64,000 nucleotides of DNA from Podarcis melisellensis (lineage: Eukaryota), in assembly GCA_964234715.1 (NCBI GenBank), contig OZ174282.1. The stretch is one strand, 5' to 3'. The notes under the pieces are model-generated. The model saw only the letters and a list, made by a program, of their open reading frames with translations, searched no databases and was not told the DNA's origin. Of the stretch, positions 3,096 to 21,504 are shown piece by piece (position 1 is the first letter of the stretch; each line of letters begins with the position of its first letter). The position numbers and the translations under genes were made by a program.

Positions 3096-6000
3096 ATGTG
3101 TCTATATATGCATGTAGCTTACTCTCCCATGTTGCCTTTATTGATGCCAATAATTGCATAGCTGTTACCCACAGCAGGGCCTAGAAAATGCTCTTGATTC
3201 TCTCCAGGCAGGGATAGTTTCATACAGCAGCAGCCACGAGGCACTTGGCACCCAGTATATGTGCTCACCAGTGTGCCCCTTGTAATTTTCCTTTTGGGAG
3301 GGTGGGGTCACTTCCTTTGACCCCCTCCCTCCCGCCTGCTTTTACAGTAACTCCTGCAGAAGGCCAGGCACACAAGACCTCAGCAATGTGTGGGTCCTGG
3401 GCCTGGAATGTTTTCTTTCATCTCTAATCGCTGCACTGAGGCTCATAAATCATGTAGCCAAGACAACAAGTAAAAACACGACTGTAATTTGTTTCTTCCT
3501 GGCCCATTTTTGGCACAGCAAAACCAGAGACTTTCTTGGCTGGGAATGATGATGACACCATAACAGAAGGCGAGTGAGTGGACATCAACCTGGTGACTCT
3601 TCCCCCACCTTCCCAGCTTTCTTTTTAGAGGTGCCAGGAGGTAGTGGGATGCTGACAGTTATCTCACTGCTGACCATGCTGGATAAAGAATAACACAATT
3701 AGCAACCGGATTGTGTGTGTGCGCGCGCCACTTCTTTGAGGGAAAGAACATCATATTCATGTGTGTTTATTGTCACCAAAGGCACCTGATCAGATGGTGG
3801 AAACAAAGTTTTCAGATAAACGAATTAATTTTTTTTAATTTTTCCTTTTGGTGATTGGAGGCAAAACAGGCCTGGTGGTGCAAGAAGTTTATGGACTGAA
3901 AAAATGTTATGATTGTCCTTATTTATATCACGTCCGCAGCAATCCTCTGCAGAATTAAGTGGAAGCAAACCTCACTGAACACAGTTATATTGACTTTGAG
4001 GCAAACATCCATGGGAATGGGCCACTGTATCCTAATTTCCTGAACCACAGGTGACATGTTCCTGCTCCTAAGTAGTTTAGTGTATGAGTTCAAAACTGTC
4101 TCCCATGAATACATAACAATTGATTGACTGTATTGTGATGGGCCACCTCATCCAGAACTGTTTCACGAAGTGGCTCTGGGAAGCTCTCAGATCAGAGCTG
4201 ACAGAAAGCACCATCCCATGTCTGTCTCAAGCAAGTACACTCAGGCATTGACAGCTGGCCACCCCATTAGCCTCAAGCAGGCTTCACCACTGGATGCCAC
4301 CAGATGTTGTGGACATGGCTCTTATAAGCCCCAGCATCATATGGCCATGCTGCCTGGGGTTCATGGGAGCTGAAGTCTGAAACATCTGGAGAGCGACGGG
4401 TTGGCAAAGACTGTCCTAGGGTAAGCAATGGCACCACTTGAATGGGCTGTGCTGTTGGGCCAGTGCTACATAATCCCACATAATTCTTCGGTTACTATTA
4501 AAAAGAAAAGAAAAAATATAGAAACCGTTTTTTTGGGGGGGGGGTTCTGAGAATGCCACTGCCTTTATGAGAACAGAGTTTCTACACAACTCCTAGTTGG
4601 GAGTCCTGGGAAATAAAGGCTTGGGATGTGTGTGACTTACTCATTTCTGACTAGCCTGATAAGACCCAAGATGGACCCCACCACTGTTGTCTTCCTCCTA
4701 CCCCTTTCCCTCAGTGGCTGTCAAAGAATATGAAGGGGGAGGGAATTCCACAGATCTCTCTTGGGCCTCAGCTGAAACTCCCCATTCCATAGCTCACTGG
4801 AAGAAGAATGAGGAAAAACACATACTTATACCAGAGCCTGCCAAATGGAAAATTATAAAACAGTGGGGAGAGGAGCGTGATTGACACACAAATAAATAAC
4901 ACTTAGAATGAGACACATTGTTTAAAAAAGGAGGGAAGTTTTCTTTTCGCTCCATTCCTACTGCAGAAGTTATTACAAGCAACAGCTGACATCTTGTCAA
5001 AGTTGTTGGATCCAGTATGTCCCACTGAGTTCAATGGGCCTGCTCTTACGACTGTCTCGATCCAGCACCTTATTTGCTGCCAATAGCTACAGCTGCTCTC
5101 TCCAACTCTTTGAGAATAATGTGGTTCAATCGGGGCAGAGTGAGGCAGCTGCCTCAGACAGCAGGGTGGGCAAAAAAAGAGGCAAGTGGAGCACTCAGAG
5201 GGTGAGCTTGGTCTGGCAGATGGAGTAGAAACAAGGCTTTTTCAAACTCTGTCTTTCTAATTTACACATGGTGGGCAAGCAATTCCATTGGTGGGCATTT
5301 AGCCCTCTCGATAACCCACCCTTCCCCAGTGCCACCTAGATCCCAAAGATTTTATAGCATAAAGGAAGGAAGGCAACACCTCTGCTATCTTTGTTATCTG
5401 CAAAACAGAACATGCCGCCCCCAGAAAGGGAAATACAACAACCTTTCAAACATTAATTAAAAAGTAATTCCCAACTACAGCATTTGAAGCTTTCATGATT
5501 TGCAATTGCACGTTTAATAATAAGGGGAAAAAATTACACTTTTCCAACAGGACTAGATATGGCAATGCTGCAAGCAAGCTATTTCTGGAACTCCGCAAGG
5601 CTATGGAAATGCAAAGCTCACATTGAATTTTAAGCGGATATTTTGCTTGTGTAGTAAGAGCACAGTTAGGATCTCTTTAAGCGGGTGACAGCAGGTGTTT
5701 ATTTTAAATGCAGAACAGGTAATTTATTGGTGTTCCACCCATGTGCTGTGTTCCCTGCGGGTATCCGCCCCGGCCAAGGATAGTGTTCATGATTCATGTA
5801 ATAAAACCAGTTTAACAAACCCGTTCTGGTGCCCAAGGTGAAAGAGTCCTACACGTGAGGTGTTTCACCATGTTTAAATGGCTGTTCCACTTTCATTACA
5901 GCCTTTTGGAAGCATAACAATGTGACAACTTTCCCCAAATACTTTTTGAAAGATCTGTTAGTTGTGCCAAACTAGAGCCTAACAGCAACCTTCAGTATGT

Positions 6001-6221
6001 GAATAGTCCAGCATCATGTTCTCATGATGAAGAAGGTGGGCATCCCTACCAGCTGGATCCATGATGTGATTTGTATTGTTTTGATGTTTTAATCTTCTTA
6101 TTGACTTCATGTAATTTCGAGTCAGTATTTTGCTACACCCTGCTCTGGGATTATTTTAGTGAAGAGCAGAACATTTCCCCATCCCTGAGCTAAGCCCTGA
6201 ATGTTATAGGAAGCATGTGCC

Positions 6222-6260
<39 letters not shown>

Positions 6261-6370
6261 TTCTTTATATCCCGCCCATCTGACTGGGTTTCCCCAGCCA
6301 CTCTGGGTGGTTTCCAACAAAATATTAAAAATACAGTACGTTAAAACATCAGTCAAATAATAATAATAAT
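6222..6370 (-). mobile_element. retroposon 3' end with (AAT)n microsatellite tail
   Basis: ~13 x AAT followed by tttatatcccgcccatctgactgggtttccccagccactctggg, a common squamate non-LTR tail in reverse orientation. Confidence 0.6.
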
Positions 6371-8119
6371 GCCTGTTTTGTAGCAATACACTCTGCCCAA
6401 GCAGGTCTCTGGCCATTACTCCCTTCATACCTACGACCAGACTAGATTCAAGCGGGGGGAAACCATCCATGATGCCGTTCATCTGTTGGCCAGAGCCAAG
6501 GCTAAACGGGTTAACTCTCAAGCCTTTGCTGGATTGCCGAGAGAGGAATCATCACCCGCTTCCTAGTCCTGCTCTTCAGCACCCTCTTGTGGGATATGTA
6601 CACACAGCAGGTTAAAGTGGATTCAGTGCATCCACACATTGTCCTCATCCAAACGGCAGCCTGAATCCTACCCACAGCTGCTTTAATTTGGATTTCCCCA
6701 ATATACAGATAACGCAGCAAAGGATATAAAGAAAATTTCGTAAGGGGAAAAAAGGCCAACATTGTGTGGACGAGTATTTTTATTATATAAAAAAAACCTG
6801 TGATGTTTTTTCTGGATGCCCTCTATGAATACCCTCTGTTACTAAGTCCTGTACTTTCATTGGCAAACTGCCTCCATGGGCCTGAGGCAACACACTCACT
6901 TTAAAAAAAAAAAAACCACTGTTTTGTGCAAGTGTGGTATATCGGAAAACTGGCATCTCAAAAATTAAAACAAATTGCCCAGTTCACAACGGGCCTCAGT
7001 TTTCCAGAACTCAGGGAAGATGGAGAATAACTAATTAAGAGAAAGGAACAGCAACAGGTTGATTTCGGTAGACAACCTGTTTATTGAATGTTCTTCCTGA
7101 TTTGTTTGTGGGAGGTTGTGTGATACCTTATCAAGCATTTTTTTAATACCACACTCTCCAGGGCATTGCTCTAGCGCTTTCCTTACTGCAAAAATCCCTT
7201 TTTATTTTGAAGCAGCTTTCTTGTGTAAGAGGGCCCAATCCATTTGAACTGCACCACCTCAATTTGCCAGGAATGTATTGAAGTCCACGCCCAAAACAGT
7301 AACAGCCTGGAGACAGGTAATTAATAAATAATAATAATTTTATTATTTACACCCTTCCCATCTTGAACCATTAATGGTGTTTGTACTCAATTCTTTCATC
7401 CTACTCTTGTCTCTGGTTGACCAGGTTTGCCAGGTTTTTGAAAGGGGGGGAATAAAAACTTTGTTTACTAAAAGCAAGGTGAGCACAGTCAAAAAAATTT
7501 ACCTGCCTCCAGCTCCAGCCTGTTGTTGTCACAGGTCCTGTTGTTTTGCAAACCACACTTCCTCAGCCAGATGCATTCCTAGCCTCCCCTTCCTGCAAAT
7601 GTGAGACTGGGGAGCCAATGCGAGAGCAATAAACCTGGGAGTGAGGAGGAGGAGAACGTGGCAGCACAGTGAGAGAAGCAGGAGCAATTGGTATCAGATC
7701 AACCTCATAACATTTTAGAGGGCATTATTTTATACTAATCGATAGGAACACATACTTTTGAGGGTAACTTTAATTATTTAACAAAACCCACATGCCACTT
7801 GATTGTAATAAAATATCTAAGTGGTTAATTAAAATTAAAGTCAAACAATAGGAGACTGTTAAAAACAGGAATTAAAAACATTCAAAAGATAATGTTCCTG
7901 TGTGCTGGTGGAGATCTTGAATTTCACTCAGATTTCTACAGCAGAACTGTTGCTATCTAACCACTGTGATCAAAGAAGCGCATTCAATATATGAGGCTGA
8001 AAGCAGGGGTTTCTCCCCAGGAAGGCTGCTGTGTGTTTGGACTATATTTTTAAAGGGAAACAACATGCAATAATGCAAAACAGCCTGGGACTCCAAGGAC
8101 ACATTTGACATACATCAAC

Positions 8120-8245
8120 CCTCTCCCAGCTGGTGCCCTGAAGATGCTTTGGACTACAACTCCCATCAGTTCTAGTATCACAAGGCTGTGCCAGCTGGGG
8201 ACTAGGTGAGTGGTAGTCCAAAGGGTACCGGCTTGGGCAAGGCTG
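8120..8245. mobile_element. degenerate hAT-type palindromic MITE
   Basis: gatgctttggactacaactcccatc ... gtagtccaa arms; same family as 26699-26834 and 36569-36700. Confidence 0.5.
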
Positions 8246-8626
8246 GTATGCATAATTTTAAAGAGAGAATAAAGTAGAGAAGCTTTCTCTGGTGATGGTG
8301 TCCACACTCTGTTTAAGGTGGCAAAAAATAATGTCAAATTTCACTGGAACCTATTTCCAAAAAGATTGCAGATGTGATCTATTCCTATGTGCCCTCCCCA
8401 CCACAATCTCGGCCCACAAGCTTTGTCATCCTCCTCTTCCTCCTAGAGTCAAATTTCCCTGCCCAGTGTTTGTGGAAGCTGCCCAGCTGCCCCCTTGATT
8501 TCCATGGGCAAACAGAGACACCGGGAGGGCTTGGCCTCTTCCTTCTCCTGTGTTTCATGTGGGCTTCTAGCCAGAGGAGCAAGCAGAGCCCTGCTGGGAC
8601 CATCTTGCCTATCCTGCCAGACTGAG

Positions 8627-11600
8627 ATGTCGCTGAGGCGACAGACAGCTCCCGGCTTAGCCCTGCTGCTCTGCGCCCTGTGCAGGACTGCTGTGCCTGT
8701 CACCACGCCTGAGGCTGCGCTAAGGGGGCACCAAGGACATTGCTACCAGCTTGCCCAGGAAAGACTGGCTTTTGAGGATGCCCAGGCCGCCTGCGGCCGA
8801 TGGGGAGGGCACTTAGCACAGGTCCCTTGGGAGGTGACAGGGACGTGGGGTGCTCTGAGAAGGAGGAGGGGGCAGCTGAGAGGGCCCTCTGGAGGCTGGT
8901 GGGTCTCCAAGGGCCCAACCAAGCCTACGGTGGCAGGTAAGTCAGTCCTGTGGGGGCACCAGAGAGGGCTGGGCAGAGGTGGGAAGTTGTTTCTACTCCA
9001 GAGGGTGGAGGGTGCGTCCTGGTTTCTATCACAAAGGCCAGGTCCCTTTACACAGCTGACTTGGCTGTGGTTAAAGGCTGGGATTTGGGGAGCCACATTG
9101 AGGGGCAGGGTGTGGAGGTGGGGGGCACTGTGCTGCAGAGAGCTGGCTCTTTTGCTTGTAGTATAGAATTCTGCTTATTTTCATCTGCTCTGTCAAGGGC
9201 ATACCACCCCGCTCTGCCTACTGTGGTCAGATCTTACAAGAGGGCAAGGCCCTCACCTTGCCCTGCCCAGCTTGCCATCATGCCCATGGCAGCCTCTTGT
9301 GTCTTTGCCCAGGAGCCCAGCCTCATCTGCATGGGGCTCACCATCAGCCCCCCACCTGCACCTTCCTCTCCAACTTGGGCTTGCTGCAGGAGGCTACCGG
9401 GCCCACGTGCCGCCAGAGGCATCCTTTCATCTGCGAATTTGGTGAGAGGCCAGCTGGGCTGCCAGGGTGGGATTGTGACACCTCCACTCCACCCCATCCC
9501 TGAGGACAGAGATTGCTCCTCCTGACCCAGGAGGGGCTCCCTTTCAGGGTGGTCCTTTTTGCAGGTCCTGTGGAGGGAGGTGAATGCCCAGTCAAAGTGG
9601 CCAGGAGTGCCAACAGCTCCAGGCCTTGGCAAAAACAGAAGGCTCAGCTGGTAGGTGATGGTGGCCGGTTCTCTTCCCTCCAAGTCCAAAGCAAATAGGC
9701 TTTCCCTCCTGCTGCCTGAAACCAAACTCCAGCAGATGCACCAAGGCAGAGGATGGGGGGGGGCAATAAAAACAGCCTGTCTGCCACCTCTTAGCCACCT
9801 TCCAGACAATTCCTTTGGGCATGATTCCTGAGCAAGGTCCTAACAGGGAACCCTTGGCCCTGCCCCTTCCAAGAAAGCCTATTGGGTGACATATCCTACC
9901 TGGCACAGTGGCACTGCTCTGTCCCACTCTTTTTTCTCTGTCTGCCTCCAGGATCTGACCTCCATGGGGCGGAGGCCACAAAGGCTCATGCGGCGGCATC
10001 TGGGTGATAAGCAGAAGTACCCAGGTGATGTGGGGATTTATTGATTTCTGAAATAATGCATTGAAGAGTAGGTCATCTGCAATTATAAGCAATTGTGAGA
10101 GGCTGATCATCTTGGGTCATTCTGCTTATTTTAACAAACCTTTTAAATGCCCTAAAATAATATTTGTGGGGCTGAAAGGGGTATTTTATCTTATTTCTCA
10201 TAGACCATCTTTTCCAAAAGATTGTAGATGTCGGCACAACTAAAAGATATGCTTTCAATCTGCCTGTACAGAATTACAACTCCAACATTTACCAATGGTA
10301 TTTGTTTAAGCTGTGCCCAAGGGGCAAGGCACCCATGATTAACTGTTTTTAACAAGTTTTATTTCAGATAAACTTTTATTGCCATGTTCTACCTCTTCCA
10401 TGAAAAGAGCCTGAAGCAATGCTCAGGATGAAAATAAGCAACTGTAATAATGTAAAAGCGGGAATATAACTAGTAGCCAGTGGTTCCCTTATCATGAGGC
10501 TGATCCTTTTGCCGGTCAGGGCAGTGGTTTTCCCCTGAAAGGAAGCAGCTTGTTGTTGAGACAGGCTCACCGCAAGGAGTTTGTGTTTATGGAGGCCAAA
10601 ATGCCTGTTTCTCCCTGAGGGGAGAAAAGACTCTTGCTCATACTTCTCCTCTTGCCTCCAGAGACATCAGCAATCAGGGAGGCCTTGCAGGATGTTGTTC
10701 CCAGGACCTGGCAGCAGGTAAAAGAGCCCCACTGGGAGGGAGTATCTGGGGAGGGGACCCCCTTCAGCCCAGCCCCATTGAGGCCCACAGCAGAGCCACC
10801 AACCTTCCTCTGGCTCAAGACAGCCAACCTCTCTTCTGGTGGTTAGCACAGGCCTTATGTAGGCTGGGGATCCCTTATTCAGTGATCTGCATTTGCCTGC
10901 CAGCATTTGAGCCCAAACTCCTGATTCTGCCTGCAGGAGCTGCTCCAGCGACTGACACTGCCGGTGAACAATGGTGCCTGGAGTGCCTCTGAGCTGGTAT
11001 GATTGGGCCCATGGGGAGGGCGGATGCCCCAGAAGGGACTGAGCCCCAACTCCAAAGGCTGTGTAGCTCCCATGGGGAACCTGAAGAAAGAGTCAGGCCA
11101 AGTCCTAAGAAGCTCTTTCCTCCAAGAGAGGTGATGGGGAACATCTCATGGAAGGAGTCGAGGGACCCCCCCCATTAGTGCTGAGGGTCTTGGGCAATGC
11201 ATGGGCATGGAGGAACATTAACATTACTGTATGTGCCTTTGCATGCCAGGAAGAGGAGGTGGGGTTTCTTCAGGCTGTCAGTGAGGACCTGCTGAAAAGG
11301 AGGCCTCCAGCCTCCCCACACTGGCACCTCCTCAACCTCCTGGCAGTCCATGGCACCAGCCGGCTCCTGCAGGTCATTCTGGGCCCCTGCTCACCCAACG
11401 TCAACATCCAGGTGAGGATATGCCACACTCCCGGGTGCCCTGGTGGGGAGGGACAGGCCGGTGCATGGGTCCCTTCATCCCATAATGCCCCATCTTGGAT
11501 GGAGATTGAGTCCCCAGTAACTGCCCACTTCTCCCTCCAGCAGCATGAGGCCCTGACTGGCACCCTGATGCAGATCCTTCACAAACTGGAGCAAGCTCTT

Positions 11601-14600
11601 CAGGAACTGGGGGGCAGCAGTGATGCCATCACCATGGAGACGCCTCTCATCAGCATCTATACACAGAGGTAAGCTACCAGGCTAACGGGGAAGCTTGACT
11701 GGTCTGGGAAGGGAAGGGAGAAAGATCTTGGCAGGAAGTGTCCAAGGGAAAAGGCCTTGAGGTAGCCATCTGCCCTTCCCTCATCATGGCAGCTGGCTCA
11801 CATTTGCCTGGCTGTCCTGCAGATTGGCAACTCTCCTGAGGCACCCTGATCCCAGGCACCATCTGCTGTGCCCTGGCTCTAACCCTAACTCTCTTTGTCT
11901 CCCTGGCTCAGGGTGAACTCTTCCAGGCTGGGCAATATGGCGTTCTCCTTCCCTGGCAACCCATGGGCAGCTAGAGTCATTTTGCCAGAGCAGTCTGCGC
12001 TGGGCGCCGTCATGCCACAGAATATCCCAGTGGATGTGCAGGTCAGAGGGAGCAGGAGTGTGTGGCTGGCCCTCTCCTTTGGACTGGGCACAGGGGCCTT
12101 CCCGTTCCATGAAATGCAAACTCTCCTCTGGCATCTGCTGCTACCCCAGGAGGAGAAGGAAGGCAGAGAGCACCCAGGCAACGAGTCACTTGCTGTGCTG
12201 TGGAATGCACTGGGGCCCAGCACTCAGAAGTGACTTGGCTCCTTCAGATCAGCCTGATGATGCACCCAGAGGCATCTTCCCTCCCTCCCTCTTCTGGAGC
12301 CTCATGCCTCTGGGTTGGACTCCAAACATTTCATGACACCCCCCTTGCCAACACCCCTGCAACCAAGGCCCCCTGACTTGGCCCTACTCAATCTACCTAC
12401 CCAGTGCTTCCAACAGTAAGCAGCCATGTTTCCAAAATGGGGAGCAGAGCGTGAGGGGGGGGGGGAGCGCCCAGCCATCCTGCCGAGTGTGGCCATGTGG
12501 CCGAGCAGGCATGGCTGGTGGGTCAGGCCCCCTCAGCAGTGGCGCTGCCCTTTCTTCTTCTCTCCCTCTCTCTTTAGATGGTGAGCTTCCTGGGCAGCCC
12601 CTTTCCCCCGAGCTCTGGGGAAGGGGTCACAGGAGCTGTAGCTGAACTGAACCTCCTTTCTGAGGGCAGCCAGATCAGCGTTAGCAACCTGAGCACCCCT
12701 GTCCAGGTATGTCCTGCCTAGAGACTTTGGGCTGAGTGGAGCCTTCCTCCCTGTAAGGGGGTGGGCTATTGAGCATCTCCAGAGGGCAAGGACAGCCCTC
12801 CAGGATCATTTCTCATGGCAGGATCTCATCGTGTGGAGATCAGCTGGATCAGCCACCAGGTAGGCCAGCCGCTTAGCCTGGGAGAGCCTACAGTACAGGG
12901 TCTGGTCTCTCTGTCATCATCCTTCCCTCTCTCCCGCCGCAGCTCACCTCCATCAGTGAGGCTGCCTCTGCTCCAGGTGAGAGCCTGAGGCAGCTGCTCA
13001 TCTCACTGTGGTGGTGCAGTAGCAGCCAGTGACATCCTGCTCTCTTTTCCCATCCCAGATTTTCCTGCCCCGGGTTGGGCCTAGAGCCCCTGCCGAGCCA
13101 GCTGCCTTCCTCTCTCCAGGGGAGGCCCTCCTTCTGACTGTGAACGTGACATGGACAAGGGGATCCCTGATGATCCACGCTCACCTGGACCCGGTGGGGC
13201 CTCTGGAGCTCTTCCTGCAGCCAAGCGAGCAACTCCGGGAGCCCATTGAGCCCAACGTTGGCCTGGGTATAGCAGGGGGACAGAAGAGCTGGCTTCTGCT
13301 TCCACTTTTGGCCTGGGGTGTGTGAGGACCTCTTCCTAAAATGGTTTCCCTTTTGTGTTGCCCCCCCCTCCGCCGCCCCCATCTCCTGCAGATGGCTACA
13401 CTTGGCTAGTGAAGGAGGAAGTTCTTCGTGACCTGAGAGGAGCCCTTCAGTTCCTGGTGGTGCCACTGAACCTCTCTGCCAGCCAGGGTCCTGCCACCTT
13501 ACATGTCAGCACCTATGGGATCCAGTGCGTCTCCCGGCACCTGCCTGATGCCCAGTGGCGAGAGGCAGGCTGCAAGGTGAGTCTTGGCGTTCAAGAAACA
13601 AAGGGAATCTGGGTACCTTGCGCCCCCTACTGCCAGAGGCAGGGAAGAATCAGAATAGCTGCCTCTGGTCCTTAATAACACTTCTATCCCATTTCAAGAC
13701 CATACTGCCTGCTTCTTTATTTAAAGCATCTGGATCTCTGTTTTGTGAGAAATATCCAAAGTGATCTGCTGCCCAGAAGGGCCCTTAATCCCACCCTGTT
13801 TGCAGGTAGGAGAGAGCAGCAGCCTGGCGGAAGTCCACTGCCTCTGCACCCACCTCTCCTTCTTTGGCAGCAGCTTCTGGGTGGCGCCAGTCCAGCTGGA
13901 TGTGGTGCGCACAGCAGAGTACTTTACCCAGGTGAACAAGAACCCAGTTCTGGTCGTGGTCCTGGGAGTCGTCTATGCCCTCTACTTGGTGGGGGTGGCC
14001 TGGGCCCGCTGGTTGGACACACGCCCCCTGCACCAGGTAAGTTGCTGGGGGTGAGAGGGCCGGAGGCAAGGGGGGGTCTGGCAGCAAGCAGCACAAACTC
14101 ACAGGCCCTTGGCAGCTCTTAGGTGGTGATGCTCTCAGAAGGGCAGGTCATGCAGCAACAGCCACCATTTGGAGACCGAACTCTTGGAGGGTCTCCAGCG
14201 GCTCTCCCACGCCATGTGGAGAACAAAGGACTCTGATCTCCTCACCCTCCACCCCTAAAGGGTGTGGCTGGCTAGGGGCGGGGAAGGCTTCTTATTTTCT
14301 ACAAATGGTCACGACTGCATTTTGCTCTCTATAAACATACAGCTGAGTGAGATGCAGCTAACTCTGTTCTGTCTAACGATTCCATGTGGATTTAAGGTTT
14401 GCACATCTCTTCGCCAGCAAAAGAGATCCCCTTATTCTGGTCTTCACTGGGGCCAAGTGGGAAGGACAAATGTATGTATGGGGCCTCAGCGCTCTCTGCT
14501 CTCCTGCGCTGCTCCATGGCAGAGCATGACCCTAGAAACGCCACCCCTCACACCCCTCTCCCTCTCCCAGGCAGGGCCAGTCCTCCTGTCCGATGATGAT

Positions 14601-17600
14601 CCCTGTGCCCAGTATGGCTACCTTCTCCAGATCTCCCTGCATGGGCAGCAGAAGGCCCCCGGAGGCAGCCCCTGTGTGAGTGGTCTGCCCTGAGTGATGG
14701 AGGGGGTGGGGTGCCTGGTCTTTGCCCCAGATCTCACCCAGCCCTTTCATCTCCAGCAGGTCTGCATCTGCCTGCAGGGATCGTCTGGTGTCAGCAAGCC
14801 TCGGCGCCTGCCCCTGGATGCCAGCCTCTTCCTCCTACGGGAGCCATACCCACTGGGAGAGCTCCAGAGCATTTGGTTGTGGCAGGAGCTCCACCCCGCC
14901 CCACAGCTGCCCTGGTCAGTCTGCCCAGAAGTAGGGTGGGCGGGTGACATCCCACTTGGAGACATTGTGCTGGCATGCGGGCACTGTCCACCTCCCATGG
15001 CTTGGCTTTGGGTGCCAGCCTGCCTCTGCTGGACATGCCACAATTCTCCCTCTCTCTGAATGGGGCAGAGGTGGTTATTGTGTCAGGGTGGCCATCTTCA
15101 GGCACCCTGAGGAGGTGGGGCTGGGGGCGGGTCAGCAGCACACCTGGCACTCGTCCAGCAGGGAGGCCTCCTGCCTCTGCCTGACAGGACCTTCTTCTAA
15201 GTGGAGCACTAAGAGCACTAGCCTCCTGCCTGGCACTCATTACCCATCCCCTTCCCTCAGGCATATCGCCTACATCACAGTGCGAGACCTGCAGCAAAGT
15301 AGGAGGTTCCATTTTTCTTGCCAGCCGTGGCACGTCCCAGCAGCAGGGGCCCCACACAGCACTGCCCAGCATTTCCTTGCAGCTCCACAGCACCAGCCAA
15401 CAGCATTCTGGTAGGCTTACCAAGAGACGGGGGAGTCTGTTTGGGTGACCTCAGTCCCCACCTGCCCACTGTGCATGAACTTAGCAGGGATCTCCGAACC
15501 GCCTCCTCCCAGCCAGAGACTCCAGCTGTCTTCCTCCTCTGGCTCTCCCATAGCCTGGCCCACCCACCCATCTTCCGCTCTCTCTGCAGGCCCATCTTCC
15601 GGCAAAGGACCCTGAACGGGCTTCGGGAGGAGCACACAGTGCTGACAGTGCTGCTGACCCGGACAGGCCACGGGCGGCCCGTCACGCGGGTCCAGGGCCT
15701 CTCCTGCGGCTTCTGCCTCCTCCTCTGCTCTGCGCTTGTCAGCCTCATGTTCTGGGAGGTGCCCCACGAGTCACCCGAGCTCCTGAGTGTTGGTAAGGGC
15801 TGTGCCACATGGGATATCTCCCAAGGGCCACTGGCATGGAAAAGGGAGCTGTGCAACTCCTCTGCTCCAACTCCTGCCAGTGGAGGAAAGTCCCTCCTGC
15901 CACAGCTGGAGGGAGAAACACAGTCATACCCTTTGGGCCGGCAGGAGGGCGGTTCATGCATTGTATTAGGACTTCGGAAGAGCCTGGGTGCAGCTGGATC
16001 AGGCCAACTGATGCCTCCTGGGAAGCCCACAAGCAAGGCTCCTCTCCTACATTTGATCCCCTACCCCCTGAATCCGGAGGTATCCTGCCTCTGATTGTGC
16101 AGGTAGCAGTTGGTGCCTCCTTCCAGCGTCCCTGGGGCACAAAGAGTGGTGACTGGTAGGTCCACTTGCAGGCACTTTCCCCCCCTGTTGATACACAGGC
16201 AACTGCTTCTCCCTCTCCTGGAAGGACATCATGATCAGTGTGGAGAGTGCCTTGATTACCTTCCCCGTCAACTTGCTCCTTGTATTCATCTTCCGCCACG
16301 CTGAACCACGCAAGAGCCATGCAAAGCCTGGCCTGGCAACGGCTGTGCCAAGTGCCCCTGCCAGCCCAACAACCCTGGACACTGTGCATGAGGTAGGAAC
16401 AAGAGCTCTCCAGGACCCAGGACATTTTCCCCATTGTGCCTCCCCTTGGAATAAGGCCATGGCTGAGCTGGCAGTGGAGAAGAACCCCCACCCGATCCCC
16501 GAAGCCCCACGTCCCCCAGGATCCTTCTTGCACCAGTGAACTTGGTCCCAGGGAGACGTTTTGCATTTGCAGATACAGCAAGCACTGGCTTGCCAGAGAG
16601 TTTTCTCTGTGGCAGTTATGGGATGGCTTTTAATAGGTAGGAGAGGATATGTTAATAGTAATTTATCCCTCCAGGTGCCCACATTTGTGGGTTGAACATA
16701 CAAAGAGATCAGCTTATCGCTTCGTTTAAAACACAGGGCTGAGCAGAGTTCAAAGTCTCATCCTCAGCAGAAAAATAGAAAGCATAGGAAAAGGCTGTGA
16801 AGCATTCATTAAATTCAGTCCAGCCACAAAGCAAGCTGGTTGCCCCTTAACAAAGAACCAGACACAGACTGAGAAGTAAGTTTAAAATATGTTTACTTAC
16901 TCATAGTCATGCAATTGTTCTCAGCAGCAACAGCAGTAAAATAAATGCAGGCAAAATACTTATATTTACAGTATGAACAGCTTGAGGCATGTGGCCAATG
17001 CTGGAGCGATAGGATATATGTCTGCTCCATCACTGGCTGAAGAGAAAAGAGAGAGGGAAGGAACAGGAAATACTTTGATTCTTCATTTCCAAGAGAGGAG
17101 GGAAAATGACCTCACACAGAACCATCTCTACCAATTACATTTCTATGGTCCGAGTCTCTCTATCAATAATGTGACCCTATGGTCTTAACCCTTTCACATG
17201 CTAACTCACAAAAATATGCATTGTTAGATTTGGCTGCAAATCTCCCACAGCACTTCTCCCATCTGCTACATCTTCTTGTGCCCAGTTTGCCCACCTTACC
17301 CTCAGCCTGTTGGGTGCATTTATGCCCCAGTCGCCTGCCACTCTCCCGTCTACCCATGCTTGTCTTCCCCTCCCTAGAGCCTGCGCGGGGCAGTGGAGAC
17401 GCTGAGCAAAGCCAGCAAGCAGAGCCAACAGCTGCTACATCCCGACATGGACCTTGAGGAGCTTCTGCAGTGGCTGGCTCGTTTTATCCACCCTGATCCT
17501 GGGGAGGAAGAGGAGGCAGCAGGTGAGAGCCCAGCCATGCCTGCCTGCCTGCCTGCCTTGGGCAGCCCTGCTAGACCCCCAGAGGATGGTGACGCTGCGG

Positions 17601-18975
17601 CTTCTGCTTGCAGGGAGGGAGCCCAAGATCTCCAGTGTGGCACCCAGCCCTGATGCGCTGCACCAGACCTACTGCAACCGCTACCTCCTCCTGAAGCTGC
17701 GGCACATCTCCCGTCTCCTGGGGGAGCTGGAACCAGGAGTCCCGACAGCCAAGCACCCTCCGGCTCTGCAGCAGCGCGTGGAGGAGATGGCCAGGCGTCT
17801 CGAGCTAGCAAGCCCCATCCAGTCTCGCTCCATGTAGGTAGCTCAGACAGGCTCTGTGAGCAGGCAGGGAAGCCTACCTTGCAGAGCCTCTTCCTCATGC
17901 CTTCTTCTTGTTCCTCCACAGCCGAAGGTGGCACTTGCCCTGGTGGGGCGCCTGGGTGGGGTGGGCCCTGCTGGTCTCCCTCAGCGCAGTGGCCACCTTC
18001 TTCTCCTTGCTCTATGGCTTCCACTATGGCAAGGAGAGCACCGAACGCTGGCTCATCTCCACTGCCATCTCCATGGGCCAGGCCCTCTTCGTCCTGCAGC
18101 CCCTCAAGGTACTTCCCAGCCAGGCTGAGCAAACCCAGCATTCCAGGGGGGCCTTCTCATGGGAGGTCGGGTTGCCAGATCTCTAAGTCTGATCTGAAGT
18201 CTTCAGGTTTGCCTAGTACCCTCCAGGTGGCAGGTGAAGGGCTTGAATCGCTAGATGGGTGAGAGTTCCAGTGGTGTGTGTGTGTGTGTACACAGAAGAC
18301 TGTGTATAGAGGGTGCACACTTTGGACCAGCAGGAGCTGGATGCAAATTATAGCATAGACACTCTGGAGGACTACCTCCCCTCTTCTCCTAATTAACCTC
18401 TGTCTCTAGGACCCTTGTGACTATACCAGGGTCTGTGCCCCTGACACCACCAGGGGCAGCCCCTAGGTCTCAGGTTTGGGCCCTGAAATCTCAGGGTCTG
18501 TGATACTCCTCAACTGGCAACCCGTAGGGGAAGGGACATCTCAGCAGCAGCAGAAATCATGGTGCACATACTTCTTCCTCATCTCATGTATGTGTCTGCC
18601 ACCTGCCTGGCTGGGACAGGTGTCTGGCATTGGAGCACTGCAAACACCCACTGCATCTCCTCTCTTCCTCCCATGAATTTCAAGGGGGTGGGGGAGAATT
18701 TAACCAAAGCACCCTCACACATACACCAGTTTGTTGTGGTGTTTTGGCACAAAGTGAGGGGCTTGGCTCACCTGGAGAAAGGGAAGCCTGCAGATGCTCC
18801 CTCTGTTTTATGGATGGGGGGAGATGTTCCCTCTGTTTTATGGATGCGGATCCTGCCCATCCTTCTTCTTCCATGAAACCCAATGCAGGTGATAAGCTTT
18901 GCCATTTTCTGTGCCCTGATACTGAAGAAAGCAGAGGATGAAGATGAGGCAGCCCTGGACCTGGAAGACCGGTAA
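8627..18975 (+). CDS. Polycystin-1-like protein (PKD1L2/PKD1L3 family) lacking the cation-channel module; ~1110 aa, 22 coding exons
   Basis: Phase-consistent GT-AG exons with no internal stop: 8627-8936, 9313-9441, 9565-9650, 9952-10024, 10662-10717, 10937-10996, 11250-11411, 11541-11668, 11912-12041, 12578-12706, 13059-13266, 13392-13576, 13806-14036, 14571-14675, 14760-14914, 15261-15410, 15590-15792, 16199-16392, 17378-17522, 17614-17833, 17922-18108, 18889-18975(TAA); total 3333 nt. Signal peptide LALLLCALCRTA; C-type lectin (CYQL..F..AQAAC...GGHLA...WW...C...C..RHPFICEF); GPS CVS....W...GCK..HCLCTHL|SFFGS; TM1; PLAT-like; TRVQGLSCGFCLL; LPWWGAWVGW...LYGFHYGKES..RWLIS...QPLKV. The four small stalk exons (9565-10996) are the least certain. 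Confidence 0.85.
16686..17249. mobile_element. solo-LTR-like element in intron of upstream polycystin gene
   Basis: TGTGGG...CCCACA termini and similarity blocks with 1242-1690; AT-rich insertion in a GC-rich gene. Confidence 0.5.
18793..18846. repeat. 30-bp tandem duplication
   Basis: gatgctccctctgttttatggatg..gatgttccctctgttttatggatg just upstream of the terminal exon. Confidence 0.7.
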
Positions 18976-20347
18976 AGGGAGGAAGGAGGCTTGCAGAAGT
19001 GGAAAGGCAGGATGAATTGAAGGAGGGAAGGGGAAAGGGGCCTCTCCAGAGAGGGTGGGGACCTGGACTGCCTCCAAGTAGAGAAGGGCAAAGGTGGCAC
19101 TGAGAATGTCCCGCACCAACTGCAGAAAACAAACTCAAGTTCAAAAAATTCCTTTCAAGACAGGGGCCAGGCAAGAGGAAGGGTTTTCAGTACTACGTCT
19201 GTTCCCTCTTCCTCCTCCCGTAAGGGAAGGTTATGCACACACAGAGAAGAATCACTCCTCTCCACTTTGGATCGGCATGACTAGGAGCCCACCTGGACCA
19301 TTCCTCTGCTGCTTTGGGTGGCCCGGCAAGGCATGCAGGCTTGGTGGAGGAATCCAGTTGCTGGTGTGGGCACCTCTGGTTGCCAAGAGCAGGTAGCCCA
19401 GGGCCTGCTCTGGGAGAGGCAGAGGATGCAGAGTGGCTACACTAGGCATCTCCTGGGATTGCTAAACAGGAAGGAAACACATTGAACTGGAGCCCCTGCA
19501 AGGGCAGGACTGGGACTGTCCCCTGTGGAAGGGGAGAAGACTAAAAGGTGGTGACTGGCATGTGCACAGTGGGGGTGGAGAGGAGTCTGCCTTCCTAACT
19601 CTTGACACTCCCCGTTAAAAAGATCTTGAGTAGTCTCTCTTTGCTCGTGGCCTTGAAACGCCACTGCCAGTCAGACTAGAGCAGACATATTAGGTTACCA
19701 GTAATTTAACCATCCTAAGGGAGACTGCAGCTCCAGGACTGGGGCCAAGGGAGCAGAAAATATGCTGGGAAGCAGTCCTAGGGCCCCATCCTGACCCATG
19801 TCTTTGACCTCTGTGATTGCAGGCTGTGCTCTTTCCAGTGATGGGAGGACAACTTTCTGCGAGGCCACCTTGGCTTTTGCCATGCCATGTGCCCAAGACC
19901 TCCAATCAGCCTCTCCAACATGATGTCACCCAAAGGCCAGGACCATCTCTCTGGAGGAATGGGAGGGCAGAGCATGGGAGTCCCATTCTGTAACCTGCCA
20001 ATGGAGCCAACCGTGAACTCACTGAGTGTTGAAAGAGTTGGGATGCAACTCAAGCTTGCTGAGGGTTTGCATGAGGTTAAATTGGATAGAGAAGGGAACC
20101 TCCAAGATTGCCTAACTGCCCTTTGATCTCTGTGATGACCTTTCCTTTACTATTAGACTGATATTCTTAGGGTTCCTGACAGTGACCAAACTTCCTGCTT
20201 CCCCCTCTTCCTTCTGAAGCTGAAGGAGAGAGGACATCTATGGATGTATCTCTGCCGAGAGTAAAGAGCAAGCATGACTCCCTTGCAGCTTTAAGATTAA
20301 TTAGCTAAAACTAGTAACTCTTTTCTATCCAAGTATATATTTCTTAT

Positions 20348-20353
20348 AATAAA
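20348..20353 (+). terminator. candidate poly(A) signal of upstream polycystin gene
   Basis: First AATAAA after the TAA at 18975; GT-rich element (tgtgtgtgattg) ~35 nt downstream. Confidence 0.5.
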
Positions 20354-20669
20354 TGGAGCTTTATTATATTCCAATTTTAAGTACTCTGTGTGTGATTGCA
20401 ATGAAGACCAGCCTCCTCTCCCCAGTAAGAAGTCTATGTGAGGTCAGCTTCCAAGCTGTGTGCTATCTTGCAAAGTGATTCAACACTAGGCATGGCCCAC
20501 ACCGAATAAATGGCAGGCTACAGGTCAGTGGTGTCCGTGGAAGCTCTCTTTCACTCTCTGAGGACATCATAATTGGTTGCTCAGGGGCCCAGGCACAGAT
20601 CCAGACACCCATTCCCACTTCAAGCCCCCTGGTGGCCCCCTGGCAGTGACATGCAGTAAATTAAAAAAA

Positions 20670-20885
20670 ATAAATCCTTCCAGTAGCACCTTAAAGACCA
20701 ACTAAGTTAGTTCTTGGTATGAGCTTTCGTGTGCATGCACACTTCTTCAGATAAGGTATCTGAAGAAGTGTGCATGCACACGAAAGCTCATACCAAGAAC
20801 TAACTTAGTTGGTCTTTAAGGTGCTACTGGAAGGAATTTTTTTTGTTTTGACTATGGCAGACCAACACGGCTACCTATCTGTAAA
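20670..20885. mobile_element. Penelope-like element terminal remnant (inverted pseudo-LTR pair)
   Basis: Near-perfect ~80-bp inverted repeat (ttccagtagcaccttaaagaccaac...gttggtctttaaggtgctactggaa) followed by agaccaacacggctacc; related copies at 45095-45160 and 45730-45920. Confidence 0.75.
20755..20794 (+). ncRNA. minimal type I hammerhead ribozyme motif
   Basis: GGUAU-CUGAAGA-A-GUGUGCAUGCACAC-GAAA-GC-UC|AUACC: complete core, stem I GGUAU/AUACC, palindromic stem II, AGCU stem III; mirror copy on - strand at 20716-20753. Confidence 0.75.
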
Positions 20886-20947
20886 TGCAGTAAATTGTAA
20901 AACCTCATATGGCTGGCTGGAGACTCGCCAGCACTTGTGCAGAAGTA

Positions 20948-21090
20948 TCATAGAACTGTAGTTTTGGAAGGGACCGTGAGGGTCATCTACTCCTACCTCC
21001 TGAGGAATCCCACTGGCACAACCTCCCTGGAAAGAGGGTCCCTTCGCCTCCGCTTAGAAACATCTAATGAAGAGGAGTCTGCCACCTTCC
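20948..21090 (-). mobile_element. CR1 LINE 3' fragment
   Basis: atcatagaactgtagttttggaagggacc..gggtcatctac matches the reverse of a CR1 3' end. Confidence 0.55.
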
Positions 21091-21229
21091 TGTCTGCCCC
21101 ATTCCCAAACCCCTTGAAATCCCATTTCTTGTCACCCGAACTGCTTGGTTATCATACTGTTCTCTGGAGCAAGAAGAATGGGATGCGCCTCCTGGGCTCT
21201 CAACATTTGCCTGCCAATGTGCCTTTTAT

Positions 21230-21504
21230 CCAGCAGACAATGCAGTTGCTCCTCCTTTCTTCCCCGTCGGGGTGCAGACAATGGCACCCTCTTCTTTGCA
21301 AACAAGAGCGCCCATCTCCAGCTGGAGCGCCAGGTGCTGCACCTGTTCAGCCTCTGGGTGTGGCGCTGCTCTGCTCCTCTTTTCAGCAGCTCCCCCACCT
21401 GCTTTCTCAGTTCGTGGGTTGAGCGTGCACGGTGTGGGGGGGGGGCGGCGGTTTAGACTATTAAAGCGTGGCCCCGGGCCACCTTGCTCCAAAGAGGGAG
21501 CGGC
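21230..21504 (+). promoter_or_regulatory. PKD1L3 proximal promoter (E-box cluster, GC box, TATA-like)
   Basis: GCAGACAATG x2 (ACAATG at 21237, 21278); CAGCTG 21319, CAGGTG 21331, CACCTG 21340; GGGGCGG ~21442; TATTAAA 21459; start of CpG-rich segment ~21420-23350. Confidence 0.5.

What the first reader, a model, noticed from the sequence alone, without database searches (positions are those of the whole stretch)
8627..18975. Extra, intact 'channel-less' polycystin-1-family gene in tandem upstream of PKD1L3
Seen: 22 exons splice with canonical signals into a stop-free 3333-nt ORF (~1110 aa): signal peptide, C-type lectin, short stalk, GAIN/GPS, TM1, PLAT-like domain, TM2-TM5, then an acidic tail (KKAEDEDEAALDLEDR) and TAA. 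No TOP or channel exons occur in the 2.5 kb before the next gene's ATG. Known: PKD1-family proteins normally have 11 TMs, the last six forming a TRPP-like unit that co-assembles with PKD2/PKD2L1, and human has only PKD1L3 at this locus. Inference: this is a 5-TM, adhesion-receptor-like polycystin that cannot supply a pore subunit. It may be a ligand sensor, a shed-ectodomain source or a modulator working alongside full-length PKD1L3. An open frame despite heavy divergence argues for selection rather than decay.
Basis: partly seen in the sequence, partly recalled or inferred. Interest (0 to 1): 0.9.

Follow-up and report, generated by a model that had tools for sequence, protein, structure and literature searches.

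The report
Short, channel-less polycystin-1-like gene
This lizard gene next to PKD1L3 is a real, transcribed and selectively constrained polycystin-1 relative that stops after its fifth membrane helix, so it cannot form an ion pore; it is the lizard copy of an old gene shared with frogs and ray-finned fish that databases mislabel "PKD1L2".

Summary
One correction: the TAA at 18973-18975 sits on a GT splice donor. Spliced RNA contigs of close relatives and NCBI models join exon 22 (ends 18971) to a 23rd exon at 19823. The product is then 1116 aa, ending ...LEDRLCSFQ, stop TGA 19839-19841, AATAAA at 20348.

No channel or TOP exons follow. The next gene (ATG 21505) is a full 11-TM PKD1L3.

The gene is old, not a lizard oddity. 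Lacerta and Zootoca have the same 23 exons with identical lengths and no stop (dN/dS 0.30-0.43, p down to 1e-10). Proteins ending 30-43 residues after TM5 occur in other lizards, many frogs, bichirs, sturgeons, gar and over 100 teleosts. They form one clade (100/99), separate from PKD1L3 and PKD1L2. Bowfin, a frog and lacertids keep the short gene and full PKD1L3 in tandem; plaice keeps only the short one beside DHODH.

England et al. 2017 saw the fish copy and read it as a decaying "partial pkd1l3". It looks instead like a long-lived paralogue encoding only the ectodomain, GAIN/GPS, TM1, PLAT and TM2-5. Its function is inferred, not shown.

The scan's notes hold only this same stretch, not other DNA.

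The parts
8627..8936 (+). Exon 1: ATG, signal-like hydrophobic segment (aa 7-25), first half of the compact C-type-lectin-like domain
   Evidence: aligns to the Phrynocephalus orthologue N-terminus; donor GCAG|GTAAGT. Same ATG and exon in NCBI's Zootoca model and an intact 310-nt exon in Lacerta and Zootoca.
9313..9441 (+). Exon 2: second half of the lectin-like domain (...TCTFLSNLGLLQEATGPTCRQRHPFICEF)
   Evidence: acceptor tttgcccag|GA keeps the frame. 129 nt in all three lacertids. CTLD fold for the orthologue.
9565..9650 (+). Exon 3 (stalk)
   Evidence: GT-AG; same length in Lacerta and Zootoca
9952..10024 (+). Exon 4 (stalk)
10662..10717 (+). Exon 5
10937..10996 (+). Exon 6
11250..11411 (+). 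Exon 7 (helical part of GAIN begins)
   Evidence: AF2 model of orthologue P0157:230-1107 starts with three long helices
11541..11668 (+). Exon 8 (GAIN)
11912..12041 (+). Exon 9 (GAIN)
12578..12706 (+). Exon 10 (GAIN)
13059..13266 (+). Exon 11 (GAIN beta sandwich)
13392..13576 (+). Exon 12 (GAIN beta sandwich); 185 nt like the matching PKD1L3 exon 27204-27388
13806..14036 (+). Exon 13: GPS motif HCLCTHL|SFFGSSF, stalk, TM1 (aa 600-618); 231 nt like PKD1L3 exon 27564-27794
   Evidence: Pfam GPS 23.6 bits on orthologue P0157.
14571..14675 (+). Exon 14 (PLAT-like, part 1)
   Evidence: Beta sandwich that matches PLAT/LH2 domains. No Pfam PLAT hit in lacertids.
14757..14914 (+). Exon 15 (PLAT-like, part 2)
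15261..15410 (+). Exon 16 (PLAT-like end, linker)
15590..15792 (+). Exon 17: TM2 (...VTRVQGLSCGFCLLLCSALVSLMFW)
   Evidence: The loose end of contig X2 record 8 before 16198 matches the last bases of this exon when compared by eye with its translation.
16199..16392 (+). Exon 18: TM3
   Evidence: RNA joint 16392>17378 in four runs.
17378..17522 (+). Exon 19 (cytoplasmic helical region)
   Evidence: RNA joints
17614..17833 (+). Exon 20 (cytoplasmic helical region)
   Evidence: RNA joints 17522>17614 and 17833>17922
17922..18108 (+). Exon 21: TM4 and start of TM5 (LPWW...YGFHYGK...QPLK)
   Evidence: RNA joint 18108>18889
18889..18971 (+). Exon 22: end of TM5 and acidic stretch (VISFAIFCALILKKAEDEDEAALDLED + CG). 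Counterpart of PKD1L3 exon 33036-33138.
   Evidence: RNA joint 18971>19823
18972..18975 (+).
   Evidence: sequence. Used as donor in X1, X2, X5 and X6; left unspliced in one X6 contig.
19823..20374 (+). Exon 23, terminal: G CTG TGC TCT TTC CAG TGA (R-LCSFQ-stop, TGA 19839-19841), then about 530 nt of 3' UTR with AATAAA at 20348-20353
   Evidence: the only AG + LCS[LF]Q* site downstream. (contigs run to 20291, 20343 and 20374). (AATAAA). The lacertid protein models whose last exons are present end LCS(F/L)Q.

Best explanation
What it is (shown). A real, transcribed protein-coding gene of 23 exons and 1116 aa. It is the lacertid member of an old vertebrate paralogue of the polycystin-1 family. 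It lies between DHODH and PKD1L3 in the species where both flanks were seen. NCBI labels it 'polycystin-1-like protein 2', and England et al. 2017 called the fish copy 'partial pkd1l3'.

What it encodes. Only the front half of a polycystin-1-like protein: signal peptide, compact C-type-lectin-like domain, stalk, GAIN domain with an HL|S GPS site, TM1, a diverged PLAT domain, TM2-TM5, a short acidic tail and a five-residue end from its own terminal exon. TM6-TM11, the TOP (polycystin) domain and the C-terminal tail are absent from both the gene and the transcript. It therefore cannot take a subunit's place in a PKD2-type tetramer through a pore domain.

How it most likely works (inferred, about 35-40%). 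It is a non-pore receptor-like membrane protein. The GAIN domain cleaves at HL|S. The lectin-like N-terminal fragment stays tethered or is shed. That fragment acts as a sensor of, or agonist for, polycystin-2-type channels, possibly the neighbouring PKD1L3/PKD2L1 complex. The TM1-PLAT-TM2-5 module anchors and traffics the protein. The model for this is the soluble lectin-containing N-terminal fragment of PC-1, which activates PC-1/PC-2.

A role as a stand-alone adhesion or trafficking protein unrelated to channels is about equally open.
For: Sequence and model. All 23 exons are GT-AG and the 3348-nt frame has no stop.

Transcription. Contigs from four runs, labelled as three organisms (90-99% alike), skip introns at 16392>17378, 17522>17614, 17833>17922, 18108>18889 and 18971>19823. 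They run on to 20291-20374 and show no joint into gene 2. AATAAA is at 20348.

Independent annotation. NCBI and other models in Podarcis muralis, P. raffonei, P. lilfordi, Lacerta agilis and Zootoca are two separate genes where the neighbour was seen. Those with their last exons present end ...LEDRLCS(F/L)Q. The Zootoca model uses the same ATG and exons 1-2.

Constraint. Exon lengths are identical and there is no stop or indel in Lacerta and Zootoca. dN/dS is 0.30-0.43, with binomial p 1.6e-6 and 1e-10 against neutrality. That is no looser than the front half of neighbouring PKD1L3 (0.44-0.65).

Age. The short clade is monophyletic at 100/99 and follows the species tree: bichirs, bowfin and teleosts on one side, frogs and lizards on the other. 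It is separate from PKD1L3 (100/100) and PKD1L2 (94/97). Every stand-alone short-clade protein in which the QPLKV motif was found ends 30-43 residues after it, apart from P0006 (70). More than 100 ray-finned fish species carry GPS+PLAT proteins of about 1000-1100 aa with no channel domain.

Synteny. Pelobates: DHODH, short gene, a 1836-aa gene. Plaice: DHODH, short gene, then no PKD-like sequence in 10 kb. Bowfin: short gene, full-length copy, IST1.

Folds. GAIN (latrophilin, BAI; E about 4e-6), PLAT (5-lipoxygenase, lipases; E about 1e-4) and CTLD (E about 3e-6).

Literature. TM1-5 is a separable N-terminal domain, and TM6-11 alone gives channel function (PMC8357825). [quoted passage not shown]
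Against: No protein-level or functional data exist for any member of this clade.

Pfam does not recognise PLAT or Lectin_C in the lacertid protein. The squamate stem branch is long (0.88 changes per site), so part of the ancestral function may have been relaxed or changed in lizards.

The lectin-like domain has only a short, low-confidence loop where canonical lectins bind calcium and sugar (pLDDT under 50). By eye the EPN/QPD and WND motifs are absent. That weakens the analogy with PC-1's lectin agonist.

NCBI's Podarcis models start at varying downstream exons and lack a signal peptide.

The RNA runs are from relatives, not shown to be this species, and their tissues are unknown. dN/dS of 0.3-0.4 is only moderate constraint.
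Confidence: 0.8

Rival explanations
1. Decaying remnant. This would be a transcribed but functionless leftover of a once full-length PKD1L3-like gene that lost its channel half. This is the reading England et al. 2017 gave the fish copy.
For: PMC5318412 calls the fish gene 'partial' and 'not bona fide'. In lacertids PLAT and the lectin domain fall below Pfam thresholds. The squamate stem branch is long. No orthologue from mammals, birds, turtles, crocodilians or snakes appeared in my searches, so the gene may be dispensable there.
Against: The same truncated architecture persists in bichirs, sturgeons, gar, over 100 teleosts, frogs and lizards. A dead gene would not stay open that long. Three lacertid genera keep all 23 exons with identical lengths and no stop. 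dN/dS is 0.30-0.43, significantly below 1. The gene has its own terminal exon and poly(A) signal.
Confidence: 0.08
2. One long gene. The short gene would be only the 5' part of a read-through transcript that continues into PKD1L3. This is how it is modelled in Phrynocephalus (2765 aa) and Pelobates cultripes (2401 aa).
For: Fused database models P0002 and P0003 contain two GPS-TM1 stretches. The bowfin model P0013 also joins the two genes.
Against: RNA contigs end at 20291-20374, next to an AATAAA, with no joint to 21.5 kb or beyond. An in-frame TGA lies in exon 23. Gene 2 has its own ATG, signal peptide and lectin domain. A second signal peptide and ectodomain following five TM helices makes no topological sense. 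NCBI calls two genes in Lacerta, Zootoca and Pelobates fuscus. P0013 skips a whole second set of lectin-to-TM5 exons, so it is a chimera.
Confidence: 0.03
3. Recent duplication. This would be a lizard-specific partial tandem copy of the 5' half of PKD1L3 (an 'extra' gene in the narrow sense), or an assembly duplication.
For: Tandem position and matching exon lengths with PKD1L3: 185, 231 and about 187-193 nt.
Against: Over GPS to TM5 the gene scores far higher against PKD1L2 and the fish and frog short proteins than against its neighbour (blastp bit scores 290-400 against 199). The tree puts it in a clade with fish and frog genes (100/99). The same tandem pair exists in bowfin and frogs. DNA runs hold the stretch in full.
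Confidence: 0.01

Closest known systems
'Partial pkd1l3' of zebrafish, pufferfish, stickleback, medaka and spotted gar (England et al. 2017, PMC5318412)
   Same: The zebrafish protein has 1083 aa with Lectin_C, GPS and PLAT and no polycystin cation-channel domain, and lies next to dhodh. The architecture and locus match. Teleost proteins of this kind (plaice, delta smelt) fall in the same clade as the window's gene, and plaice has it right beside DHODH.
   Different: The paper read it as pkd1l3 on its way to being lost. Here, and in Lacerta, Zootoca, Pelobates and bowfin, it sits beside a complete PKD1L3-type gene, so it is a separate paralogue. The zebrafish sequence itself was not in my tree.
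PKD1L3 (the downstream neighbour, 21505-38166 in the window; mouse and human PKD1L3)
   Same: Adjacent, on the same strand, with the same order of lectin, GAIN/GPS, TM1, PLAT and TM2-5, and several exons of equal length. Both belong to one larger group together with a shark and ray clade (94/95).
   Different: PKD1L3 goes on to TM6-11 with the Polycystin_dom and PKD_channel domains. This gene stops 32 residues after the QPLKV motif in TM5. The two form separate clades.
PKD1L2 (the name NCBI gives this gene)
   Same: Highest pairwise similarity outside the short clade in the membrane region (and the 49% identity hits).
   Different: PKD1L2 proteins have about 2400 aa and 11 TM helices with a channel domain. 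They form their own clade (94/97) outside the group that holds this gene. The locus differs: by my own knowledge PKD1L2 is not next to DHODH and PKD1L3 in human.
Sea urchin SpREJ proteins with fewer than 11 TM helices (Gunaratne et al. 2007, PMC1934368)
   Same: PKD1-family members with lectin, GPS and PLAT domains but no channel half: SpREJ1, 8 and 9 have one TM, SpREJ2 two, SpREJ7 six.
   Different: They are echinoderm genes with REJ domains and other TM counts. No orthology is claimed or tested.
Adhesion GPCRs (latrophilin, BAI, CD97)
   Same: GAIN domain with a GPS site directly before the first TM helix; these are the best structural matches of the ectodomain.
   Different: They have seven TM helices of the secretin-like type. 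This protein has five, with a PLAT domain in the first cytoplasmic loop.
Shark pkd1L4.1 and pkd1L4.2 (Mayeur et al. 2024, PMC11979771)
   Same: Described as lying outside the Pkd1L2 and Pkd1L3 clades. In my tree a shark and ray clade joins the short clade and PKD1L3 in an unresolved three-way split.
   Different: Two of the three shark and ray proteins in my tree, Mustelus and Pristis, have a channel part (Pfam; alignment); the third, Amblyraja (1794 aa), also aligns over the channel region. Whether they are the paper's pkd1L4 genes was not checked.

Membership tests
Polycystin-1 (PKD1-like) family | GAIN domain with a GPS motif directly before TM1 | tested here: met
   HCLCTHL|SFFG in exon 13. 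Pfam GPS 23.6 bits against a cut-off of 22.5 on orthologue P0157. The AF2 model matches GAIN domains of latrophilin, BAI and CD97 at E 4e-6 to 1e-5.
Polycystin-1 (PKD1-like) family | PLAT/LH2 domain in the loop after TM1 | tested here: inconclusive
   No Pfam PLAT hit at E<=0.01 in the lacertid protein. Frog and bichir orthologues score 42-85 bits. The modelled beta sandwich matches PLAT/LH2 domains of 5-lipoxygenase, lipases and RAB6IP1 at about 1e-4, but the model's alignment included true PLAT proteins.
Polycystin-1 (PKD1-like) family | Eleven TM helices, the last six forming a TRP-like unit with a TOP/polycystin domain | tested here: not met
   The transcript ends after TM5. There are no channel exons in 18972-21504. 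The four short-clade proteins scanned here (P0157, P0162, P0007, P0008) have no PKD_channel or Polycystin_dom hit, and none is on record for the listed short orthologues apart from the chimera P0013. Five hydrophobic helices follow the signal segment.
PKD1L3 orthologues | Falls inside the PKD1L3 clade; locus between DHODH and IST1/ZNF821 | tested here: not met
   The PKD1L3 clade (100/100) holds the window's gene 2 and excludes this gene. The locus is shared, since the two are tandem neighbours.
PKD1L2 orthologues (NCBI's label) | Falls inside the PKD1L2 clade; about 2400 aa with a channel | tested here: not met
   The PKD1L2 clade (94/97) excludes it. Length and architecture differ.
Short DHODH-adjacent polycystin clade (the fish 'partial pkd1l3') | Lectin-like domain, GPS, TM1, PLAT and TM2-5, ending 30-43 residues after QPLKV; one clade; next to DHODH and/or PKD1L3 | tested here: met
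   Ends of the proteins; clade at 100/99; synteny. The zebrafish member itself was compared only through the paper's description.
C-type lectin-like domain | CTLD fold with four conserved cysteines and a WIGL-type strand | tested here: met
   The AF2 model of the Zootoca orthologue, residues 28-150 (pLDDT 70), has CTLDs as all of its top 50 PDB matches, E about 3e-6 and TM about 0.6. The cysteines and WWV are conserved in alignment A3. Pfam Lectin_C was not hit exon by exon. The calcium and sugar loop is short and poorly modelled.
Adhesion GPCR | Seven-TM secretin-like core after the GAIN domain | tested here: not met
   Five TM helices with a PLAT domain in loop 1; no 7tm family in Pfam.

The most novel reading that the evidence does not exclude
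Jawed (at least bony) vertebrates ancestrally carried a sixth PKD1-type gene. It is a stand-alone 'front half' polycystin: lectin-like domain, GAIN, TM1, PLAT and TM2-5, with its own terminal exon, lying between DHODH and PKD1L3. It would have been under selection since the split of ray-finned fish from tetrapods (by my knowledge over 400 million years ago). It is kept alone in teleosts, kept together with PKD1L3 in bowfin, frogs and lizards, and lost in mammals. That would show that the N-terminal membrane module of polycystin-1 proteins has a function of its own, independent of any pore. One possibility is as a cleavable, lectin-bearing agonist or sensor for PKD2-type channels.
Probability: 0.55. 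Interest if true: 0.7.

Novelty: new variant of a known kind. Interest (0 to 1): 0.55.

Why it matters
Polycystin-1 proteins are usually described as 11-TM partners of PKD2-type channels, and what their first five helices and PLAT domain do is still poorly defined. Here nature has kept exactly that half as a separate gene, without the channel half, under purifying selection from bichirs to lizards.

This gives a clean natural construct for asking what the GAIN, TM1, PLAT and TM2-5 module does by itself. Zebrafish and Xenopus carry the gene and are ready model organisms for knockouts.

It also corrects two labels. NCBI's 'polycystin-1-like protein 2' for these roughly 1000-1100 aa proteins is not supported by the tree. 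The 'partial pkd1l3' of ray-finned fish is better read as this paralogue than as a dying PKD1L3. On that reading teleosts lost the full PKD1L3 and mammals lost the short gene.

It also flags fused or chimeric database models (Phrynocephalus KAJ7311801, Pelobates cultripes CAH2324014-16, Amia MBN3299417).

Tried and rejected
- Pfam on ten stop-free exon-bearing stretches by reference found nothing relevant, because the domains are split by introns.
- A PDB sequence search with the TM4-5 exon gave no hit.
- A first script for the spliced aligner was only a skeleton and gave nothing.
- I looked for DHODH in window 1-8600 by translating the start of the frog locus. No hit, so DHODH was not located in the window.
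- Earlier notes searched for 'DHODH PKD1L3' gave nothing new.
- 'pkd1l4' in PMC6140781 was a false match to Pkd1 L4122.
- The locus look-up for the delta smelt protein found no record.
- The profile search with alignment A1 reached only frogs, because its words come from the first 500 residues.
- tblastn found no PKD-like sequence in the 10 kb after the bichir gene (L005) or after the Pelobates gene (L003). This is uninformative for such large genomes; in Pelobates a 1836-aa gene is called in that very stretch.
- Bowfin as a full-length member of the short clade was considered and rejected. The locus holds two complete sets of lectin-to-TM5 exons, and the model P0013 jumps from the first set to the channel exons of the second.
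- The joined 1116-aa model of the window was not given to any database, family or fold tool. Those steps used single exons by reference or the database orthologues P0157 and P0165.

Full report
THE SEQUENCE. The window has no N and no masking. Stop-free stretches on the + strand between 8.6 and 18.2 kb carry recognisable polycystin-1 pieces. These include a signal peptide and the start of a lectin domain, the GPS motif HCLCTHLSFFG followed by TM1, FTRVQ-type TM2, TM3, and LPWW...YGFHYGK...QPLKV for TM4-5. A second, complete set with channel helices lies at 21.5-38.2 kb.

EXON MODEL. I wrote a spliced protein-to-genome aligner. It was guided by the Podarcis raffonei protein P0157 and, for the first two exons, by the Phrynocephalus protein P0002. 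It gives 23 exons, all GT-AG, 3348 nt, 1116 aa and no stop. If exon 22 is read on past its donor, the frame gives CGG TAA and a length of 3333 nt.

The joined protein was built only inside scripts, from window coordinates. There it served for the frame check, a hydropathy scan, dN/dS, local BLAST against proteins already fetched, and the tree. It was never handed to a database, family or fold tool. Those steps were done exon by exon by reference or with the database orthologues.

THE 3' END. The lacertid database proteins that reach the last exons end ...AALDLEDR+LCS(F/L)Q. The only AG followed by x-LCS[LF]Q-stop downstream is at 19823.

Contigs of four public runs, labelled as three organisms and 90-99% alike, skip the introns precisely, so they derive from RNA. 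The joints are 16392>17378, 17522>17614, 17833>17922, 18108>18889 and 18971>19823. One 1339-nt contig carries them all and runs on to 20291; others reach 20343 and 20374. AATAAA sits at 20348-20353. No contig joins this gene to gene 2, whose first exon is barely covered.

One contig (X6) is unspliced across 18943-19848.

tblastn with ten channel-half queries finds nothing credible in 18972-21504. The best E-value was 0.016 and the weak hits lie on both strands. The same queries hit gene 2's channel region 4-10 times each.

WHAT THE PROTEIN IS. The exhaustive search with the GPS-TM1 exon returned a 97% identical 940-aa protein, then two fusion models of 2765 and 2401 aa that each hold two GPS-TM1 stretches, then proteins of about 950-1030 aa.

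Cluster look-ups name them. They are 'polycystin-1-like protein 2' of Podarcis muralis, P. raffonei, P. lilfordi and Lacerta agilis. Frogs (Pelobates, Rhinoderma, Pseudophryne) and bichirs carry the same name. Further searches add Zootoca, Pogona, Sceloporus, Anolis, more frogs (Hyla, Xenopus laevis, Ascaphus, Bufo, Pelodytes and others) and delta smelt.

With a bichir query, 348 proteins pass E 1e-60. The best 120 are all from ray-finned fish: sturgeons, gar, tarpon, eels, herring, carps, catfish, salmon and many percomorphs. Most have 900-1100 aa. All carry GPS and/or PLAT, some also Lectin_C, and none has a channel domain except the bowfin model.

Every stand-alone short-clade protein in which the QPLKV motif was found ends 30-43 residues after it, apart from P0006 (70 residues). 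The squamate ends share S-x-Q (LCSFQ, GPGSLQ, LSSHQ). Three of the frog ends share E-T-x-(L/F), which by my knowledge resembles a class I PDZ ligand.

DOMAINS.
- Pfam finds GPS just above its cut-off in the lacertid protein, with no PLAT. Frog and bichir orthologues have clear GPS and PLAT. None has PKD_channel. The fused Phrynocephalus model has the channel domains only in its second half.
- An AlphaFold2 model of P0157 residues 230-1107, from a 33-sequence alignment (mean pLDDT 74.5), shows three long helices, a large beta sandwich, TM1, an eight-stranded sandwich, TM2, TM3, a helical cytoplasmic region, then TM4 and TM5.
- Its best PDB matches are GAIN domains of adhesion GPCRs (E 4e-6 to 1e-5) and PLAT/LH2 domains (E about 1e-4, rmsd 3.5-4.4 A over about 120 residues).
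- The N-terminal domain, modelled from the Zootoca protein (pLDDT 70, the other four models poor), matches only C-type lectin-like domains in its top 50 (E about 3e-6). Its long loop is short and unmodelled, and I see no EPN/QPD or WND motif. It is best called lectin-like.
- Hydropathy gives the signal segment and five membrane helices.

SELECTION. The Lacerta agilis and Zootoca vivipara loci hold the same 23 exons with exactly the same lengths, no stop and no indel, the signal and lectin exons included. Pairwise dN/dS (Nei-Gojobori) is 0.30-0.43. The share of non-synonymous differences is far below the neutral expectation (p 1.6e-6 and 1e-10). The TM2-TM5 part is the most constrained (0.25-0.39). 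The front half of the neighbouring PKD1L3 gives 0.44-0.65 in the same species pairs. NCBI's Zootoca model is identical to my model over the first 292 residues, so it uses the same ATG and first exons.

PHYLOGENY. The tree covers GPS to TM5: 48 proteins, 621 columns, IQ-TREE with a site-heterogeneous model, careful search.
- The short proteins form one clade (100/99), split into ray-finned fish and tetrapods as the species tree predicts.
- PKD1L3, including the window's gene 2, is a separate clade (100/100).
- A shark and ray clade (97/98) joins these two in an unresolved three-way split (94/95).
- PKD1L2 (94/97) and lamprey lie outside.
- Left out: close duplicates and rows covering under 60% of the region, plus ten partial or less relevant unnamed rows (some of them with fuller coverage), P0157, P0006 and the Channa row.
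- The squamate stem is long (0.88).

SYNTENY.
- Pelobates fuscus: DHODH on the minus strand, the short gene, then a 1836-aa gene.
- Plaice: DHODH, the short gene, a 361-aa gene and Mpp10, with no PKD-like sequence in the 10 kb downstream.
- Bowfin: two complete tandem copies, a short one at about 2.2-15.5 kb and a full one with channel exons at about 19.3-34.5 kb, then IST1. The database protein P0013 is a chimera of the two. Its channel part sits next to the PKD1L3 clade on a long branch, with weak support (86).
- Lacerta and Zootoca: the short gene, then a channel-bearing gene.
- The window: gene 1, PKD1L3, and further on a ZNF821-like gene.

The tandem pair therefore predates the split of ray-finned fish and tetrapods.

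LITERATURE.
- England et al. 2017 found in zebrafish a 1083-aa 'partial pkd1l3' with Lectin_C, GPS and PLAT but no channel domain, beside dhodh. They found the like in pufferfish, stickleback, medaka and gar. [quoted passage not shown]
- Mayeur et al. 2024 named shark pkd1L4.1 and pkd1L4.2 outside the L2 and L3 clades (PMC11979771).
- Five full-text searches found no paper describing the tetrapod gene or treating the short form as a paralogue in its own right. The library is not complete.
- Su et al. 2021 define TM1-5 as a separate N-terminal domain and show that TM6-11 alone, with PKD2L1, gives normal channel responses (PMC8357825).
- Ha et al. [quoted passage not shown]
- Sea urchin SpREJ proteins have 0 to 11 TM helices (PMC1934368).

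MECHANISM. Shown: the gene lacks everything a polycystin-1 protein contributes to the tetramer, namely TM6-11, the TOP domain and the tail. It keeps the most conserved parts of the front half: the GPS and stalk (SFFGSSF.V.PVQ.DV.RTAEYF), TM1, the TM2 motif, and TM4-5.

Inferred: the HL|S site is cleaved, and the protein acts through its ectodomain and its TM1-5/PLAT module. I put about 35-40% on a role as sensor of, or agonist or modulator for, PKD2-type channels. I put a similar share on a channel-independent adhesion or trafficking role, and under 10% on no function.

VERDICT. The fish counterpart was seen in 2017 and the gene is in the databases, so it is not a new gene. What is new is the reading as a conserved paralogue that coexists with PKD1L3.

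Earlier notes of this scan cover only this same stretch (s1-512549, s1-512582). The scan has not reported it on other DNA.

Noticed in passing
window 21505-38166 (+): Complete PKD1L3: about 33 exons, about 5100 nt, no stop. It has its own signal peptide and lectin domain, a low-complexity Ser/Thr/Pro-rich stretch (about 22.4-24.5 kb), GPS at about 27.7 kb, PLAT, TM2-5, TOP and channel helices. Exon borders in the low-complexity part are approximate.
   Followed up: partly
window 20500-20900: A short stretch with contig depths in the hundreds to tens of thousands in all four RNA-like runs, many loose ends and internal joints. It is most likely a highly repeated, transcribed mobile element (SINE-like) between the two genes.
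   Followed up: no
window about 50900-52000 (+): Open frame with C2H2 zinc fingers and a long run of R/E-rich repeats (...RKWALRRQNEPLEVRLQRLERERTAKKSRRDNETPEEREVRR...). By my recollection of that protein it looks like ZNF821, which fits the PKD1L3 neighbourhood known from human. A GC-rich, CpG-island-like stretch lies at about 46.6-48.3 kb.
   Followed up: no
window 18269-18300: A (GT)n microsatellite in intron 21. The read tool skipped it as a repeat.
   Followed up: no
L004 (Amia calva, JAAWVP010002995.1) 10001-34237: The database protein MBN3299417 (P0013) is a chimera. It joins the short gene's exons (to 15539) to the channel exons (from 30577) of the next gene, skipping that gene's own GPS-to-TM5 exons at 24.8-30.1 kb.
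   Followed up: yes
P0002 (Phrynocephalus KAJ7311801) and P0003 (Pelobates cultripes CAH2324014): These gene models fuse the short gene and PKD1L3 into one protein of 2765 and 2401 aa, with two GPS-TM1 stretches.
   Followed up: yes
window 9584-10296; proteins P0001, P0151-P0159: Podarcis models start at different downstream exons (9584, 9952 or 10228) or in another frame of exon 1 (8800), and so lack a signal peptide. These are either 5'-incomplete transcripts or real alternative starts. Not resolved.
   Followed up: partly
Frog orthologues P0162, P0007, P0170 (C-termini): These frog short proteins end in ...SDETMF, ...SDETAL and ...HETSL, which looks like a class I PDZ-binding end. Squamates end in S-x-Q. 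The terminal mini-exon may carry a sorting or scaffolding signal.
   Followed up: no
L005 (Erpetoichthys) 1-8729: A separately called 215-aa Lectin_C gene lies directly upstream of the bichir short gene. It is probably the gene's own lectin exons split off by the annotation.
   Followed up: no
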